This document shows, one piece after another, positions 18,401-22,824 of a stretch of 64,000 bases of DNA. The translations under genes and the position numbers were made by a program. A model generated the notes under the pieces. That model searched no databases and had not been told where the DNA came from. It worked only from the letters and a program-made list of their open reading frames with translations. The stretch comes from Histomonas meleagridis 2922-C6/04-290x (taxonomy: Eukaryota; Protista; Parabasalia): NCBI GenBank assembly GCA_020184695.1, contig JAANOX010000061.1:1-64000 (forward strand), read 5' to 3'. Positions within the stretch are counted from its first letter, which is position 1. Every line of letters starts with the position of its first letter.

Positions 18401-18511
18401 CAGGACTACTATTTGAGGAAACTGTTGGGAATAACTCAAAACGAATCAATAGAATCTTCGATTTCCAATTTGTTAATGACATTTCGGAATAAGCCAAATA
18501 ATAATTTATGA
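15500..18511 (+). CDS. 1003-aa coiled-coil protein
   Basis: Long K/E/N/Q-rich ORF with heptad pattern; M3-like GGCCGTTT at 15479-15486. Confidence 0.85.
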   Translation: MKQQKFTGIHKPKDELEDNHQLQELNDELRQMNSKLINELAETKNILKNFKEIQNKNKEMAQALRESNAEKEDLANRLESSIKELEELKISSEKAKAKAESNFQNQISKIKESYQNKKSQHQIELQSLKHDQEQIFHQLQESRSKSDSLKSDLQNILKISSQFFSVTFSNISELLFYLQNQTNQSSSEYKLLQSKNTELQDENESLQNKVKLLKSKLNKLQSKKESQIKELKDLLENANSQIFQLESTISEQKSNISKLENQSKSDSKESNKEIIKLNNALNAEKNKNFDLERRLNSNQQMNQKMKENEILMKNKIISLNQSINDLKSTNTQLKLQNSELIKKLKSTNNIDDQNEDLKKENKEQKEKIINLIKQNESNNFEMEILKQQIENHKSEFDVMKSKLLQTETVLFETKNKLTKYKNSLSSAQSLLQKQKEELQTNYSQRNCLIEIIQKQNKIFDIYEQKLNKSNDNNINEKNNSTEKLKYNFDIIKNDEIPNETWIITEFPKDLISYLSKFVRTIENIHSSAKVHRVLQFIANYYNNKIQTIQRENNDFKERNKLIIEKINNFLFNINKIFPNLQISFEIFMNNSELQTQIIEILTKLKEENNELIFYKNKSEQNFAIIKTKLNKKTIKEVIDEIDNILENISRNNQLINNIKLEKAKLKKLISKIKKEKNENELNSAEKIKELNNKIKILQNEKEVLERNHNETEKQNEQLNSKYDQIESKLNMKENQFTNDVNNMKKEFQTKLAALQQNNLDKSKQIEEQKGYINKLQNDILFWKKTVKSIESISNEKVTEYKNYKKQFKEEQQEKQKRENEIEEIKAKYDTVIEQIKNDNNELRNLLQNVTKSLDECQLKNKKLTEDNSKLSHKNNQIKMQIESIKEQQERNEQIFETKIKAIELSTEAKKNIEIDKVKTDYEIEKRRIYAFFASNFKNFVDVRKQLGDNTFKEIVVKCSNAMNNYIKQDYYLRKLLGITQNESIESSISNLLMTFRNKPNNNL

Positions 18512-18696
18512 ATTAGTGGAACCAACTATCGTTTTAAATAAAGATTATTGCATGTTTAAATAATTTTTTTTTTAAAAAAAATTGGAATTAGATTTGGAAT
18601 TTTAAAAGTAATTTAAACAAGTAAAATTATGAAAAGGGTTATTATAAAGCTTTTAATTATAGATTTCTCGGGTTTATTATAAATTTTATTTATGGT

Positions 18697-18984
18697 TTAT
18701 TTATCAAAATTTATTGTTTCATCTGGCTGTATAACTTTCCAAACAACTTCATTTTCTGTACGTTCTTGTGTTGCTTCAAGCATTTTTTGAATTTTTTTTA
18801 TTTTGTTTAGTGCTTCATTTTTGATATATCGAATTTGTTCATTTTTTTCTGCTTGAACACTTGCAAGAATTTCTTCATTTGCTAGTGCTCGCATCCTAAT
18901 TTTATACAATTCCTGTATTTGCTTTTCGATTTCTATCTGTAACAAGTTAATCCACTGCCCTGAAACAGTTGCAGGCTTGCTCAT
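18697..18984 (-). CDS. small helical/coiled-coil hypothetical protein, 95 aa
   Basis: ATG in AAAATATG context, amphipathic helical composition, isolated between genes. Confidence 0.6.
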   Translation of the reverse strand: MSKPATVSGQWINLLQIEIEKQIQELYKIRMRALANEEILASVQAEKNEQIRYIKNEALNKIKKIQKMLEATQERTENEVVWKVIQPDETINFDK

Positions 18985-19313
18985 ATTTTGATTTCACATA
19001 ACATGTCACATCTTTTGGCTAGCCAAGTTAATGTTTTTATATTTTAATAAAACCAAGTAAAGAAAAAATATAAATTGTGCTACCATTTTAAGAACTAAGT
19101 GATTTTTTTTTAAAAAAAAAAAATTAAATATATTATTTTCCTAAAACAAAATCATGTTCCAATATTTTTATTTAATTTAGTCTTTATTTTTTTTTTTTTA
19201 TTTTAATAAAATGATTTTATTAAGCACGTTATAAAAAAGAGCACATTTAAAACAAACAAATATTATTGGATTAAAATCATTAAAACATTACAAACTTTAA
19301 ATATTAATTTCAT

Positions 19314-20873
19314 TTAGTCGAAGTTTATTTTTTCGATCCAGCCGTTCACTTCATTTTCGTCTTCATCCTCAGCCATTTCGTCATGTTTATATATCTGTAT
19401 CACTTCAATGCATTTCATTGCCAACAATTTCTCTCTTAAATCTTCAGCGAACTTCACAAAAGTTTTCGGGAATGAAGTTGATCCGCAACCGAACACGGCG
19501 AACTTCAAATTCGGCAATTCCCCATTAAAACTCATCAATTGGTTCCAGAATTGTTTTGCGCTTTGTGGTGGTGCTCCTCTTCCATAAGTCGACACGCAAA
19601 ACACGACAAATCTCAACTTCGACAATATATCGACAGTGAATTGGCTCATGTCCATTACTTCGAAACTTAACTTCTGTGCGATTTTCTCCGCAAAGTCTTT
19701 CGAAGTTCCCGTTTTCGAAGCGTACACAACTAAACCTCTCTCATTATCACTCACGTTCACATTAACCTCATTCTCATCTTCGATGTCAAGAAGATTCTCA
19801 GGAACAAATTGAAGTTTCGGTGGTAAATTATTCGCGTCTTCAAAGAGACCAGGAATGACTTCGCCGCATTCGCATCTTCCATTGCTCATGGAGACAGTGG
19901 CGCTAAACCATTCTCGATCGATAAGCTTCTTGCCGCATCGTGGGCATTTGGTCAGACGCGCTTCGGGCGCATTAACATTACCAATGTATATGAAGCGTAT
20001 GCCCGCGTTGCGCCCGATTTGTGCGCCGCGGCGAAGGGTGTTAAGTGGAGTGACGCCGCGGCCATGGAAGTTATAGTCGTCGTGGTACGCGGAGAGGTGC
20101 CAGACTATGTTCTTGTCAATGGAGGCGATGAAATTGGCACAATCTGATAATTCGGAATCACTATCATTCTCACCTGGGATGACTAATGTGGTGACTTCGG
20201 TGTGGATGCCCATGGCAACACATCGCTGAATGGTTTTACAGACCCCTTCAAGATGAGCGCCACAAATGCGTTGGTAAAATGGTTCGCGAAATGACTTAAG
20301 ATCAATGTTGACTGCATCAAGATAGGGCCCTAGGTAATTGAGGGTCTCAACGCTTTCAAAACCATTGGTAACATAAACTGTATGAAGACCAGATTCTTTG
20401 GCAAGCTTAAAAACTTGATAAGAAAACTCGGTGGAAATAGTGGGCTCGTTATAAGTGGAGGCAATGGACTTACAGCCATTTTTAATTGCTTGGGAAACCA
20501 TTTCTTCGGGAGTATAATAATCAAGATATCCAACATCATTTTGTTTGAGACATTTGACATCTTCTATGTCTAGTTTCCACATGCTAAGACTGGAGTTTTG
20601 ACAGAATTGACAGCTGAAATTACAACCAACAGTTCCATAGGAATATACTTTGGTACCTGGAAGAAAATGATAAAGTGGTTTCTTCTCTATTGGATCAATT
20701 TGAACAGTATATCGCCCCCAAACTGGTGAAAAAGGTTTTCCGTTGATATTTCCACGAGCACGGCAATGACCGAGTTTACCTGGTGGGATAACACAATATT
20801 TCTGACAACAAAGGCATTGAATCTCGTTGTTTGGAAGTGGTTTGAATAATGGCGATTCTTCGAACGCTTGCAT
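19314..20873 (-). CDS. AmmeMemoRadiSam-type radical SAM enzyme fused to C-terminal flavodoxin (519 aa)
   Basis: IDPIEKKPLYHFLPG, GCNFSCQFCQN (CxxxCxxC), STYNEP, VTNGF, NIDLKSF, EVTTLVIPGEND, CPRCG; flavodoxin YASKTGTS, STYGRGAPP, FAVFGCGS. ATG at 20873 in an AAAAATG context. Confidence 0.9.
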   Translation of the reverse strand: MQAFEESPLFKPLPNNEIQCLCCQKYCVIPPGKLGHCRARGNINGKPFSPVWGRYTVQIDPIEKKPLYHFLPGTKVYSYGTVGCNFSCQFCQNSSLSMWKLDIEDVKCLKQNDVGYLDYYTPEEMVSQAIKNGCKSIASTYNEPTISTEFSYQVFKLAKESGLHTVYVTNGFESVETLNYLGPYLDAVNIDLKSFREPFYQRICGAHLEGVCKTIQRCVAMGIHTEVTTLVIPGENDSDSELSDCANFIASIDKNIVWHLSAYHDDYNFHGRGVTPLNTLRRGAQIGRNAGIRFIYIGNVNAPEARLTKCPRCGKKLIDREWFSATVSMSNGRCECGEVIPGLFEDANNLPPKLQFVPENLLDIEDENEVNVNVSDNERGLVVYASKTGTSKDFAEKIAQKLSFEVMDMSQFTVDILSKLRFVVFCVSTYGRGAPPQSAKQFWNQLMSFNGELPNLKFAVFGCGSTSFPKTFVKFAEDLREKLLAMKCIEVIQIYKHDEMAEDEDENEVNGWIEKINFD

Positions 20874-20881
20874 TTTTATAC

Positions 20882-20889
20882 AAACCGTA
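20882..20889 (-). promoter_or_regulatory. M3-like element TACGGTTT
   Basis: Matches DRCSGYTD 8 nt upstream of ATG 20873, supporting that start. Confidence 0.45.
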
Positions 20890-20996
20890 ACTTCGTTAGT
20901 TCGTGACGGTTTATAAACGTTTTCCAATGTGATGGAATAAAATAGAGCTGAATTTCAATACAATATGATCGTTATTTTATTAAAAAAGTGGCATAA

Positions 20997-22493
20997 ATGA
21001 CTTTAAAGTTTTGTTCACACCTTTTACCAAATCTAGAAACAGAAAAATTTGGATTTGTTCAATCATCATATTCACCTGAAATTTCAACAGATTATACTGA
21101 TAAAATACAATTATGTAAGAGATGCAAATCATCACAATTTCCTCTTAAATCAGGAGGTTGTGCTTGCCCGATTTGCACACCAGAAGCAGATTTTATCGAT
21201 GGAACAATTAAAGTTGGTAATGGGTTTGAATCACGTCATTTATTTTATCTCGTACTTGATCTATCATTTTCAATTGAAACTGTAAAAGACTTTCTTCTTA
21301 GCTTTGCAGAATCACTAAATTCTGATGATTCTGCGGTTATTATTTCAATTGCCGAATTTCCAATCATGATTTATTGTGATAATGGTATTCCTTATTTCCT
21401 CCAAATCAAAGAACTTTCATCATTCGTACCATCAGATCAATATGAGGTCACCAAAGAAGATATTAAATCCATTATTATTCCATCACTCAATTCACTTTAT
21501 TCAATATTCATAGAAAAAGATAAAATTTCAACTCCAATAGATATTACTTTTCCCATACAAATCATTACTGAACAATCTGATAACAGACCATTTGCCACAT
21601 TTTTTATGATTCATAGATCAACTCAACCTCTTTCTCCACAACGAGCTGTTGCTGCTGGTCAAAAAATACTATTGCACAAAGGCATCATTCATTTTGGTGC
21701 ATCAGAAGGCTTTCGAAGACTCACAGCAATTGCGAAACACAGTTTTGGATGTGTTTTCGGTTTGAGTACGTTTAATCCGAACACTTTTTGTAAACTTATG
21801 AAACTCTCCCAACCGCTCAGGCTTGATGTAACCTTTCCTCGTTTTATTGAGGTTAGTAAGGTCACTAGTTGCGAAGGTGACATGAAAATGACATCGCTTG
21901 TAACTATCCTTCAACTTTCCTCTGGTTGTGGGTGCTCATCACAACTTTCAATTGATTTTTCTCGAATTTCAGATACATATAAAAATTGTGTAAATGCAAT
22001 CGAAACATCAATTTCAGTCTCTGGTAAGTTCCTTACTCTCCACAAGTTTTCATGGGCTGACTCATCTGAGAATTATCAAAATAGTTTAAGCTTAGCTATC
22101 AACAAGGAAATTGCCCTTAAGTCATTTGCATCCGATGTACTCCGCGGCGTATGGAATGGAACTAACTATGAAAAGCTTATTAATAATATTGATAAATCTG
22201 TAATTGTCGAGAGCTGCTTTACTGACATAGGGAAAAAGCCGGAAAGAGACTCTTTGAGACTTTACTATATGTTGCATAGTGTTGGTGCACATAAAAAGAA
22301 TGAAATGATCCAACTTCCGAATGGTGGCTGCATGTACATGTATCCGCCAGTGGTGTTCGTGCGCACAGATGAAGATGTAATGAAAGTGGTTAATGATCAT
22401 GTGAAATGCGAATGGCCATTTGATGTTCAGGTGTTCAAGGAAATGGATTCATTTAGAATTGTAGTGGAATCACTGTCTGGAAATGCTAAATAA
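20997..22493 (+). CDS. divergent Sec23/Sec24-like or Zn-finger/vWA protein
   Basis: CKRC...CACPIC Cys cluster followed by FYLVLDLS vWA-like strand. Confidence 0.45.
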   Translation: MTLKFCSHLLPNLETEKFGFVQSSYSPEISTDYTDKIQLCKRCKSSQFPLKSGGCACPICTPEADFIDGTIKVGNGFESRHLFYLVLDLSFSIETVKDFLLSFAESLNSDDSAVIISIAEFPIMIYCDNGIPYFLQIKELSSFVPSDQYEVTKEDIKSIIIPSLNSLYSIFIEKDKISTPIDITFPIQIITEQSDNRPFATFFMIHRSTQPLSPQRAVAAGQKILLHKGIIHFGASEGFRRLTAIAKHSFGCVFGLSTFNPNTFCKLMKLSQPLRLDVTFPRFIEVSKVTSCEGDMKMTSLVTILQLSSGCGCSSQLSIDFSRISDTYKNCVNAIETSISVSGKFLTLHKFSWADSSENYQNSLSLAINKEIALKSFASDVLRGVWNGTNYEKLINNIDKSVIVESCFTDIGKKPERDSLRLYYMLHSVGAHKKNEMIQLPNGGCMYMYPPVVFVRTDEDVMKVVNDHVKCEWPFDVQVFKEMDSFRIVVESLSGNAK

Positions 22494-22824
22494 ATAAAAT
22501 GTGATTTTGTAATTGGAAGTTTTCTTATATCTATTTGATTAAAGTATCTCGAAATGGCAATAGGAATGGTTAGATTTAAACTATTATTGAAAATAAAGGA
22601 ATTGATCACCAAAATTTAAATTTTTGTAGTAATCACTTAAAACGAAAAATATTATGAATCTTTTGCTTTCTTTACTATTTTTTATTTTATATGTAAGCTT
22701 GCTGGTGTATTACTAAATCAGGTTAGGGGTCAATTTTTTTATTAAAATTAAATCTCATGACAGAAACCAATTAATGAACCCTAAAAAACATAAGTAACCG
22801 TCGTTTTGGACCACCCCGAATTTG

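What the first reader, a model, noticed from the sequence alone, without database searches (positions are those of the whole stretch)
19314..20873. Eukaryotic AmmeMemoRadiSam radical SAM enzyme fused to its own flavodoxin
Seen: one uninterrupted ORF with all the family motifs of the AmmeMemoRadiSam radical SAM enzyme (TIGR04337-type: N-terminal Cys cluster, IDPIEKKPLYHF, CxxxCxxC, C-terminal CxxC ribbon), an acidic linker, and a complete FMN-binding flavodoxin (~19314-19740). Known: in prokaryotes this enzyme co-occurs with AMMECR1- and MEMO1-family proteins, the reaction is unknown (RNA/base modification has been proposed), and most eukaryotes keep AMMECR1 and MEMO1 but lack the radical SAM partner. 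Radical SAM enzymes need a flavodoxin-type reductant, and eukaryotic TYW1 is an analogous fusion with the opposite domain order. Inference: this anaerobic protist may run a complete, self-reducing three-component system, making it a tractable model for the unknown function.
Basis: partly seen in the sequence, partly recalled or inferred. Interest (0 to 1): 0.8.

Follow-up and report, generated by a model that had tools for sequence, protein, structure and literature searches.

The report
Radical SAM enzyme fused to flavodoxin
An anaerobic parabasalid protist expresses one gene that joins the radical SAM enzyme of the uncharacterised Memo/AMMECR1 system to a flavodoxin-type electron-carrier domain; the fusion is real and conserved in its relatives, but nobody has studied it and its reaction is still unknown.

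Summary
The minus-strand ORF 19314-20873 (519 aa) scores 286 bits against TIGR04337 (cut-off 220) at residues 13-348, and 78.5 bits against Flavodoxin_1 at residues 382-512. RNA contigs cover both domains without a break and stop within about 20 nt of the stop codon.

The fusion is not unique to this genome. Histomonas (77% identity), Tritrichomonas, Trichomonas and about 30 metagenomic parabasalids carry it. UniRef misnames several of them as TYW1. No paper describing it was found.

Three new points emerged:
- The FMN domain is of the cytochrome-P450-reductase (CPR) type.
- Anaeramoeba ignava carries the same enzyme fused to a complete FMN-FAD-NADPH reductase.
- Unfused orthologues occur in other anaerobic eukaryotes: Blastocystis, Paratrimastix, Kipferlia, Carpediemonas and Barthelona.

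"Self-reducing" is therefore overstated for the parabasalid protein, because it lacks the FAD/NADPH module and needs an upstream electron donor. Whether this genome encodes AMMECR1 and MEMO1 could not be tested; neither lies in the window. The scan also noted a second copy on another piece of this genome (s1-304802), which was not examined here.

Verdict: a new variant of a known kind, of moderate interest.

The parts
19314..20873 (-). Complete CDS (519 aa plus stop) of the radical SAM-flavodoxin fusion protein
   Evidence: ORF list and sequence. 100% match to database protein P0001. The start Met aligns with the Histomonas start.
19830..20837 (-). AmmeMemoRadiSam-type radical SAM domain (residues 13-348)
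   Evidence: TIGR04337 at 286 bits against a cut-off of 220. AF2 pLDDT is mostly above 90. The closest solved fold is PFL-activating enzyme, TM by target 0.76-0.80.
20763..20816 (-). N-terminal four-Cys site (C20, C23, C27, C37); metal or auxiliary-cluster site, inferred
   Evidence: All four Cys are invariant in 101 aligned homologues.
20664..20699 (-). Family signature IDPIEKKPLYHF (residues 59-70)
   Evidence: Position. Nearly invariant columns D60 to F70.
20601..20624 (-). CX3CX2C motif (C84, C88, C91) that binds the SAM-cleaving [4Fe-4S] cluster
   Evidence: C88 and C91 are invariant; C84 is missing only in the degenerate Anaeramoeba paralogue P0243.
19863..19946 (-). C-terminal Cys ribbon (C310, C313, C334, C336)
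   Evidence: Invariant in 101 homologues. Modelled as short beta strands.
19737..19829 (-). Linker (residues 349-379): a conserved NLxPKLxxVPxxL segment followed by a flexible acidic stretch
   Evidence: Alignment A1. pLDDT is 97 for residues 351-360 and drops to 73-74 for 361-380.
19317..19736 (-). CPR-type FMN-binding flavodoxin domain (residues 380-519)
   Evidence: Flavodoxin_1 at 78.5 bits, full length. The best solved relatives by sequence are the FMN domains of cytochrome P450 reductase, NOS and NDOR1. Cindoxin joins them among the best structural matches. T429, G433 and G464 are invariant.
19296..19313 (-). Very short 3' UTR and polyadenylation region
   Evidence: RNA contigs end at 19296-19312. 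One contig carries a T-rich (poly-A on the minus strand) loose end at 19312. Depth is 0 at 19048-19184.
20874..20996 (.). 123-bp divergent intergenic region shared with the head-to-head neighbour gene (20997-22493, +); presumed promoter region (inferred)
   Evidence: ORF positions. RNA contigs X3 and X4 run across it.

Best explanation
This is an intact, transcribed parabasalid gene for an AmmeMemoRadiSam-family (TIGR04337) radical SAM enzyme with a CPR-type FMN (flavodoxin) domain welded to its C-terminus. Proposed mechanism, all steps inferred rather than measured: an upstream donor reduces the FMN; the FMN passes single electrons to the CX3CX2C-bound [4Fe-4S] cluster; the reduced cluster cleaves S-adenosylmethionine to a 5'-deoxyadenosyl radical; the radical abstracts a hydrogen from the still-unknown substrate that prokaryotes process together with Memo and AMMECR1. 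The upstream donor is unidentified, because the FAD/NADPH module is absent. Shown here: family identity, intact cofactor motifs, a single transcript, and conservation across Parabasalia. The fusion predates the divergence of the sampled parabasalids (Trichomonas, Tritrichomonas, Histomonas and this genome). It probably shares an origin with the Anaeramoeba enzymes, in which the same radical SAM domain is followed by a complete FMN-FAD-NADPH reductase. The parabasalid form is therefore best read as that arrangement without the FAD/NADPH half. The direction of change (loss in parabasalids or gain in Anaeramoeba) is not resolved.
For: Family and motifs. Transcript: the X6 RNA contig covers 19296-20867 with no mismatches or gaps; the X7 contig bridges the linker (19312-20014) and carries a poly-A-type loose end; the intergenic stretch has zero depth. 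Conservation: the same architecture at 53-77% identity in Histomonas, Tritrichomonas (two copies), Trichomonas and about 30 metagenomic proteins. Eukaryotic setting: the neighbours are a Vps36/EAP30 gene and coiled-coil genes. FMN domain type: the best PDB sequence hits are the FMN domains of CPR, NOS and NDOR1 at E about 6e-11, against about 1e-5 for free flavodoxins; Foldseek broadly agrees. Anaeramoeba P0121 aligns collinearly with query residues 7-496. Its FMN domain scores 70 bits against ours. Its C-terminal 573 aa align end to end with CPR at E 5e-60. The AF2 model has pLDDT 93.2 and pTM 0.83, which suggests a defined two-domain packing. Link to Memo/AMMECR1: the closest unfused prokaryotic homologue examined, P0044, sits in an rSAM-Memo-AMMECR1 operon. 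Fusions of the radical SAM domain with Memo and/or AMMECR1 occur in several domain orders, including triple fusions in four different orders. Independent fusions of this radical SAM family to other electron-carrier modules (FMN_bind, Fer4_5) show recurrent selection for a dedicated electron supply.
Against: There is no biochemical evidence for FMN binding, cluster content or electron transfer. No model coordinates were available, so the FMN-to-cluster distance could not be measured. AMMECR1 and Memo were not found in the window and could not be sought in the rest of the genome. The radical SAM tree does not resolve the deep nodes. One clade of all flavodoxin-fused forms is not rejected but is also not shown (support 61/85; AU p 0.35). 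The donor that reduces the FMN is unknown.
Confidence: 0.8

Rival explanations
1. The flavodoxin domain is not mainly the reductant of the SAM cluster. Instead it accepts or recycles the electron released when a substrate radical is oxidised, possibly via the two conserved four-Cys sites. Oxidative radical SAM enzymes need such an electron outlet.
For: Two extra invariant four-Cys sites (N-terminal and C-terminal) could hold auxiliary clusters. The parabasalid protein lacks the FAD/NADPH module expected of a purely reducing chain.
Against: The Anaeramoeba homologue carries a full NADPH-to-FAD-to-FMN reducing chain of the CPR type, which points to electron input. The established role of flavodoxin with radical SAM enzymes is cluster reduction. 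The four-Cys sites may equally be zinc ribbons.
Confidence: 0.1
2. The enzyme is functionally an activase of the PFL-activating-enzyme type. It would install a radical or modification on a protein partner (for example AMMECR1 or Memo, or a glycyl radical enzyme) rather than modify a nucleotide or lipid. The flavodoxin would be its built-in reductant.
For: The closest solved fold is pyruvate formate-lyase activating enzyme, with TM by target 0.76-0.80. The next-best NCBIfam hits are glycyl-radical activases. Many databases label family members as PFL activase.
Against: All activase models score far below their cut-offs, for example PFLA at 61 bits against 232 and YjjW at 65 against 250. The conserved partners are Memo and AMMECR1, not glycyl radical enzymes. 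No glycyl-radical-type target is known in either partner.
Confidence: 0.12
3. It is TYW1 (tRNA 4-demethylwyosine synthase), as UniRef names the Trichomonas and Tritrichomonas orthologues.
For: UniRef names. The protein shares the flavodoxin plus radical SAM domain content with TYW1.
Against: The domain order is the reverse of TYW1. Pfam found no Wyosine_form domain at E up to 0.01. TIGR04337 is the only family above its cut-off. The closest unfused prokaryotic relative examined, P0044, sits in a Memo/AMMECR1 operon.
Confidence: 0.02
4. The fusion is an artefact: a misassembly, a merged gene model, or bacterial contamination.
For: None found. One merged model does exist elsewhere: the Blastocystis ST4 protein combines Ribosomal_L1 with the radical SAM domain.
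Against: The ORF is continuous. RNA contigs from two independent studies bridge the junction. The architecture is identical in four genera and in many metagenomes. The flanking genes are eukaryotic.
Confidence: 0.01

Closest known systems
Prokaryotic AmmeMemoRadiSam system radical SAM enzyme (NCBIfam TIGR04337)
   Same: Residues 13-348 align over the full model above the curated cut-off. The CX3CX2C motif, both four-Cys sites and the DPIEKKPLYHF signature are the same. Identity to DPANN, Nitrosopumilus, Patescibacteria and other members is about 45-50%.
   Different: It is eukaryotic and monocistronic, with no adjacent Memo or AMMECR1 gene. It has a C-terminal CPR-type FMN domain, and a lineage-specific insert after the cluster motif (residues ~100-120, low pLDDT).
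Anaeramoeba ignava KAJ5074596.1 (P0121) and KAJ5071532.1 (P0271; a near-identical EukProt entry is P0243)
   Same: Same radical SAM family, same linker position and same FMN domain, aligned collinearly to query residues 7-496.
   Different: They continue into FAD_binding_1 and NAD_binding_1 domains, giving a complete NADPH-dependent diflavin reductase. The window protein stops at the end of the FMN domain. P0243 has a degenerate cluster motif.
Eukaryotic TYW1 (flavodoxin plus radical SAM wyosine synthase)
   Same: A flavodoxin-type FMN domain is fused to a radical SAM enzyme in a eukaryote, presumably as a built-in reductant (established knowledge).
   Different: The domain order is opposite, the radical SAM subfamily differs, and there is no Wyosine_form domain. 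The UniRef TYW1 label on the orthologues is a misannotation.
Self-sufficient redox fusions with a CPR-type reductase (P450 BM3, nitric oxide synthase)
   Same: A catalytic domain is covalently linked to a CPR-type FMN domain. PDB matches include the FMN domains of CPR, BM3 and NOS.
   Different: The catalytic partner here is a radical SAM iron-sulfur enzyme, not a haem protein. The parabasalid version lacks the FAD/NADPH half.
Pyruvate formate-lyase activating enzyme (PDB 3C8F, 3CB8, 8FO0)
   Same: It is the closest solved fold for the radical SAM core.
   Different: Only 17-18% identity. PFL-AE lacks the N- and C-terminal Cys-rich extensions and the FMN domain. The PFLA model scores far below its cut-off.

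Membership tests
AmmeMemoRadiSam radical SAM enzyme (TIGR04337) | Whole-protein score above the curated cut-off of the family model | tested here: met
   286.1 bits against a cut-off of 220; E 3.2e-85; model positions 7-337 of 349.
AmmeMemoRadiSam radical SAM enzyme (TIGR04337) | CX3CX2C radical SAM cluster motif and the family's conserved N-terminal and C-terminal Cys sites | tested here: met
   C84/C88/C91, C20/C23/C27/C37 and C310/C313/C334/C336. These are invariant columns in 101 homologues, except C84, which is nearly invariant.
AmmeMemoRadiSam radical SAM enzyme (TIGR04337) | Co-occurrence in the genome with AMMECR1-family (PF01871) and Memo-family (PF01875) proteins | not testable with these tools
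   tblastn of a bacterial Memo and AMMECR1 against the 64-kb window gave nothing below E 0.2. No earlier scan note mentions either protein. The association does hold in prokaryotic relatives.
Flavodoxin / FMN-binding domain (PF00258) | Full-length match above the gathering score | tested here: met
   78.5 bits against 25; profile positions 1-143 of 143.
Flavodoxin / FMN-binding domain (PF00258) | FMN phosphate loop (T/S-x-T-G-x-T/S) and the two loops that flank the isoalloxazine ring with aromatic residues | tested here: met
   SKTGTS at 386-391, STYGRG at 428-433 and FGCGSTSF at 461-468. T429, G433 and G464 are invariant in 32 fusions. The correspondence to the CPR residues is from memory of CPR structures.
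Flavodoxin / FMN-binding domain (PF00258) | Actual FMN binding and a low-potential redox couple | not testable with these tools
   Needs purified protein.
Diflavin reductase (CPR/CysJ/NOS-reductase type) | An FMN domain followed by FAD_binding_1 and NAD_binding_1 domains | tested here: not met
   Only the FMN domain is present and the protein ends at residue 519. No FNR-like remnant lies anywhere in the window. The feature is met in the Anaeramoeba homologues.
TYW1 (tRNA 4-demethylwyosine synthase) | N-terminal flavodoxin, then a radical SAM domain, then a Wyosine_form (PF08608) domain | tested here: not met
   The order is reversed and Pfam found no PF08608 hit at E up to 0.01. No TYW1 model appears among the best 25 NCBIfam hits.
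Glycyl-radical enzyme activases (PflA, TIGR02493 and relatives) | Score above the family cut-off | tested here: not met
   PFLA 61.4 against 231.75; YjjW 65.3 against 250.2; PFLE_PFLC 51.4 against 174.35. The similarity is at the level of fold only.

The most novel reading that the evidence does not exclude
The radical SAM component may be an ancestral eukaryotic gene, perhaps of archaeal descent, that survives only in anaerobic lineages: Metamonada in the broad sense, plus Blastocystis. On this reading, the MEMO1 and AMMECR1 genes of aerobic eukaryotes, humans included, are the remnant of a three-enzyme radical pathway. Within this clade, the Parabasalia/Anaeramoeba lineage wired the enzyme to a CPR-type reductase. 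That would make the Anaeramoeba protein the first natural 'self-sufficient' NADPH-driven radical SAM enzyme, and the parabasalid protein its truncated derivative.
Probability: 0.3. Interest if true: 0.8.

Novelty: new variant of a known kind. Interest (0 to 1): 0.55.

Why it matters
MEMO1 and AMMECR1 are conserved, disease-linked human genes whose biochemical function is still unsettled. Their prokaryotic radical SAM partner has no known reaction and no solved structure. Three things follow from this work.

- **Electron input.** A natural fusion that fixes the electron-input route gives enzymologists a handle. The Anaeramoeba version with a full NADPH reductase could allow NADPH-driven turnover in vitro without artificial reductants. 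That would ease the search for the substrate.
- **Eukaryotic models.** The family occurs in Trichomonas, which to my knowledge is genetically tractable, and in other anaerobic protists. This offers eukaryotic systems in which all three components could be studied together, if the partners are present.
- **Annotation and evolution.** The result corrects a database misannotation (TYW1). It also shows a pattern of retention in anaerobes that bears on how this system evolved in eukaryotes.

Tried and rejected
- **AMMECR1 and Memo in this genome.** tblastn of a bacterial pair against the window found nothing. Word searches of earlier scan notes found nothing. Neighbourhoods of eukaryotic orthologues in Histomonas, Barthelona, Paratrimastix, a metagenomic parabasalid and an unknown flagellate showed no clustering. 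The protein-search tools list only the best 120-150 hits, so parabasalid partner proteins could not be retrieved. The question stays open.
- **Origin of the FMN domain.** A word-index search with residues 372-519 gave only 130 candidates and 4 hits, all of them the fusion itself, so it was uninformative.
- **Literature.** Searches for AmmeMemoRadiSam, for AMMECR1 with radical SAM, Memo, Trichomonas or Anaeramoeba, and for Trichomonas with radical SAM and flavodoxin found no description of this fusion. Burroughs et al. 2019 (JBC) on Memo-AMMECR1-radical SAM systems is cited in PMC7159879 but is not held. Its proposal of base or isoprenoid modification is quoted from memory only.
- **Deep phylogeny.** Quick and careful trees disagree on whether eukaryotes, or the flavodoxin-fused forms, are monophyletic. 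AU tests reject neither grouping. No donor lineage is claimed.
- **FAD/NADPH remnant.** A degenerate FAD/NADPH remnant or a separate FNR-like gene was sought in the window and none was found.
- **Whole-architecture structural analogue.** None of the AlphaFold DB cluster representatives matches both domains; the highest TM by query is 0.62, covering the radical SAM part only.
- **Hydrogenosomal targeting.** There is no N-terminal extension before the conserved fold and no upstream in-frame ATG. A cytosolic location is assumed, not shown.
Full report
**What is in the sequence**

The minus strand carries one open reading frame from the ATG at 20873 to the stop at 19314-19316, encoding 519 aa. The bacterial-code ORF list starts it at an upstream TTG. 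No in-frame ATG lies upstream, however, and Met1 aligns with the start of the Histomonas orthologue.

NCBIfam places residues 13-348 in TIGR04337, the AmmeMemoRadiSam system radical SAM enzyme, at 286 bits against a curated cut-off of 220. All other radical SAM families score far below their cut-offs, including the glycyl-radical activases, MoaA and viperin. Pfam finds Radical_SAM at 83 bits and a full-length Flavodoxin_1 domain at residues 382-512 with 78.5 bits.

- the N-terminal Cys cluster at residues 20-37;
- IDPIEKKPLYHF at 59-70;
- CX3CX2C at 84-91;
- the C-terminal CxxC...CxC ribbon at 310-337;
- the FMN loops SKTGTS, STYGRG and FGCGSTSF.

In an alignment of 101 homologues, the eight extra cysteines plus C88 and C91 are invariant.

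**It is a real, expressed, eukaryotic gene**

The window is AT-rich. The flanking genes are eukaryotic: a Vps36/EAP30 gene and long coiled-coil proteins.

Contigs from RNA libraries of the same organism were laid on 18500-22600.
- One contig (X6) covers 19296-20867 with no mismatches or gaps. That is the whole gene, including the linker between the two domains.
- An older, independent library (X7) gives a contig from 19312 to 20014. It also bridges the linker and carries a T-rich loose end at 19312, which is a poly-A tail on the coding strand.
- Depth is zero in the intergenic stretch 19048-19184 in all four runs. This argues that the libraries really are RNA.

No introns are seen. The two domains are therefore made as one transcript, and misassembly is excluded.

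**How widespread the fusion is**

A search of the 5.8-billion-protein collection returns the same architecture (503-546 aa, radical SAM followed by flavodoxin) in several places:
- Histomonas meleagridis, at 77% identity, annotated there as an AmmeMemoRadiSam enzyme;
- Tritrichomonas foetus, two copies at 60-64%;
- Trichomonas vaginalis G3, at 59%;
- about 30 proteins from metagenomes and Logan assemblies.

The host of the window is thus a parabasalid close to Histomonas. A Dientamoeba-like organism is my inference, not a result.

UniRef calls the Trichomonas and Tritrichomonas proteins 'tRNA 4-demethylwyosine synthase' (TYW1). That name is wrong. The domain order is reversed, there is no Wyosine_form domain, and the radical SAM domain belongs to TIGR04337.

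No paper in the held library mentions the fusion. An earlier first-stage note (s1-304802) reports a second copy, 1551 nt long, on another piece of this same genome. I did not examine it.

**Relatives outside Parabasalia**

An exhaustive HMMER scan of 1.84 billion cluster representatives found only three other proteins in which the match runs on through the flavodoxin.
- Two are from Anaeramoeba ignava: KAJ5074596.1 (P0121) and P0243, whose cluster also holds KAJ5071532.1. To my knowledge Anaeramoeba belongs to the lineage regarded as sister to Parabasalia.
- In these two, the radical SAM and FMN domains are followed by FAD_binding_1 and NAD_binding_1 domains.
- The C-terminal 573 residues of P0121 align end to end with NADPH-cytochrome P450 reductase at E 5e-60. 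One of the two, P0243, has lost the CX3CX2C motif.
- The third protein, P0122 (559 aa), is radical SAM plus flavodoxin only. It comes from an unidentified, transcript-like contig.

The FMN domain of the window protein is itself of the CPR type.
- Its best solved relatives by sequence are the FMN domains of CPR, NOS and NDOR1, at E about 6e-11. Free flavodoxins score about 1e-5. Foldseek on the AF2 model gives a similar picture, with cindoxin and the CPR and NDOR1 FMN domains leading.
- It scores 70 bits against the Anaeramoeba FMN domain.

This fits a single fusion of the radical SAM enzyme to a diflavin reductase in a common ancestor. Parabasalids would have kept only the FMN half. The opposite direction, with the FAD/NADPH half added in Anaeramoeba, is not excluded.

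**The radical SAM enzyme occurs in other anaerobic eukaryotes**

The unfused sequences closest to the fusion clade turned out to be eukaryotic:
- Blastocystis (BT1 and ST4);
- Paratrimastix pyriformis, where the gene range implies introns;
- Kipferlia bialata;
- Barthelona sp. PCE;
- Carpediemonas membranifera;
- an unidentified flagellate whose contig also encodes a radial-spoke protein.

All are anaerobes or microaerophiles.

The radical SAM domain trees give the following.
- The parabasalids form a fully supported clade.
- The deeper nodes are unresolved. The first quick tree groups all eukaryotes and all fused forms together, while the careful tree interleaves them with DPANN archaea, Nitrosopumilus and Patescibacteria.
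- AU tests do not reject a single clade of fused forms (p 0.35).
- AU tests do not reject a single clade of all 19 eukaryotic sequences either. That constrained tree was actually 5.6 log-likelihood units better than the free search (p 0.63).

It does not hold for anaerobic protists.

**Link to Memo and AMMECR1**

The closest unfused prokaryotic homologue examined, P0044 (48% identity), lies in an rSAM-Memo-AMMECR1 operon with a tRNA_bind gene next to it. The family also contains fusions of the radical SAM domain with Memo and/or AMMECR1 in several domain orders: triple fusions in four different orders, plus rSAM-Memo and rSAM-AMMECR1. These are strong evidence that the three act together.

Independent fusions to other electron-carrier modules also exist: FMN_bind and Fer4_5, sometimes with a DsbD-type membrane domain. 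Attaching a private electron supply to this enzyme has thus happened more than once.

In this window there is no Memo or AMMECR1 gene. I could not search the remainder of the genome.

**Structure**

AlphaFold2 with a 101-sequence alignment gives mean pLDDT 93.2 and pTM 0.83.
- Confidence is low only in a lineage-specific insert (residues ~100-120) and in the acidic part of the linker (361-380).
- The first part of the linker (351-360) is conserved among parabasalids and is modelled confidently.
- The high pTM suggests a defined docking of the two domains.

No member of TIGR04337 has a solved structure. The closest fold for the core is PFL-activating enzyme. No AlphaFold DB cluster representative matches both domains together.

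**How it most likely works**

- Shown: the family identity, intact cofactor-binding motifs, one transcript, and long-term conservation of the fusion.
- Inferred from established radical SAM and flavodoxin chemistry: reduced FMN delivers one electron to the [4Fe-4S] cluster held by C84, C88 and C91. SAM is then cleaved to a 5'-deoxyadenosyl radical, which attacks the substrate.
- Unknown: the donor that reduces the FMN. The FAD/NADPH half is missing from the protein, and no FNR-like gene or remnant lies in the window.
- Unknown: the substrate. Burroughs et al. 2019 proposed base or isoprenoid modification; I recall this from memory because the paper is not held. The PFL-AE-like fold keeps a protein substrate possible.
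- Unknown: the role of the two four-Cys sites.

The parabasalid enzyme is best described as carrying its own electron carrier, not as self-reducing.

**Verdict**

The finding is genuine. The architecture is already in public databases, partly misnamed, and is conserved across Parabasalia. It is not unique to this genome, but it is undescribed in the literature I could search.

The added value of this second look is threefold: the CPR-type nature of the FMN domain; the full-reductase form in Anaeramoeba; and the retention of the radical SAM component across anaerobic eukaryotes.

I rate it a new variant of a known kind, with interest 0.55.

Noticed in passing
P0121 (KAJ5074596.1); P0243 and its cluster-mate P0271 (KAJ5071532.1), Anaeramoeba ignava: The AmmeMemoRadiSam radical SAM domain is fused to a complete CPR-type FMN-FAD-NADPH reductase (952 and 961 aa). 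This is a candidate 'self-sufficient' radical SAM enzyme. The second paralogue has lost the CX3CX2C motif and may be catalytically dead.
   Followed up: partly
P0123/P0277 (Blastocystis), P0131 (Paratrimastix), P0144 (Kipferlia), P0155 (Barthelona), P0301 (Carpediemonas), P0124 (L006, unknown flagellate): Unfused TIGR04337-type radical SAM genes occur in several unrelated anaerobic eukaryotes. Monophyly of all eukaryotic copies is not rejected (AU p 0.63).
   Followed up: partly
P0020, P0005, P0016 (Trichomonas and Tritrichomonas orthologues): UniRef names them tRNA 4-demethylwyosine synthase (TYW1). This appears to be a misannotation driven by domain content.
   Followed up: yes
P0278 (Blastocystis sp. 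subtype 4, 654 aa): This gene model joins a Ribosomal_L1 domain to the radical SAM enzyme. The BT1 orthologue is 366 aa, so the model is probably a merge of two genes.
   Followed up: no
P0222 (ENA metagenome, 1124 aa): This protein has five tandem flavodoxin domains followed by FAD and NAD-binding domains. It is an unusual multi-FMN diflavin-type reductase of unknown origin.
   Followed up: no
L001:3943-4275: A tRNA_bind (PF01588) gene lies directly after the rSAM-Memo-AMMECR1 operon of the closest unfused prokaryotic homologue examined (P0044). This is a single case and only a weak hint towards an RNA substrate.
   Followed up: no
P0137, P0207, P0216: Prokaryotic members of the family are fused to FMN_bind, Fer4_5 and, in one case, a DsbD-type membrane domain. 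These are independent solutions for a dedicated electron supply.
   Followed up: no
P0134 (811 aa): A family member is interrupted by an intein with a LAGLIDADG homing endonuclease.
   Followed up: no
window 19328: The 2013 RNA contig (X7) lacks one base here, five codons before the stop. The three 2023 RNA runs laid here (X3, X4, X6) do not show it. It may be a strain difference or an assembly error.
   Followed up: no
window 20997-22493 (+): A head-to-head neighbour gene (498 aa, no Pfam match) starts 123 bp from the fusion gene's ATG. It is transcribed, and two RNA assemblies join it to the fusion gene in one contig.
   Followed up: partly
Tritrichomonas also has two copies.
   Followed up: no
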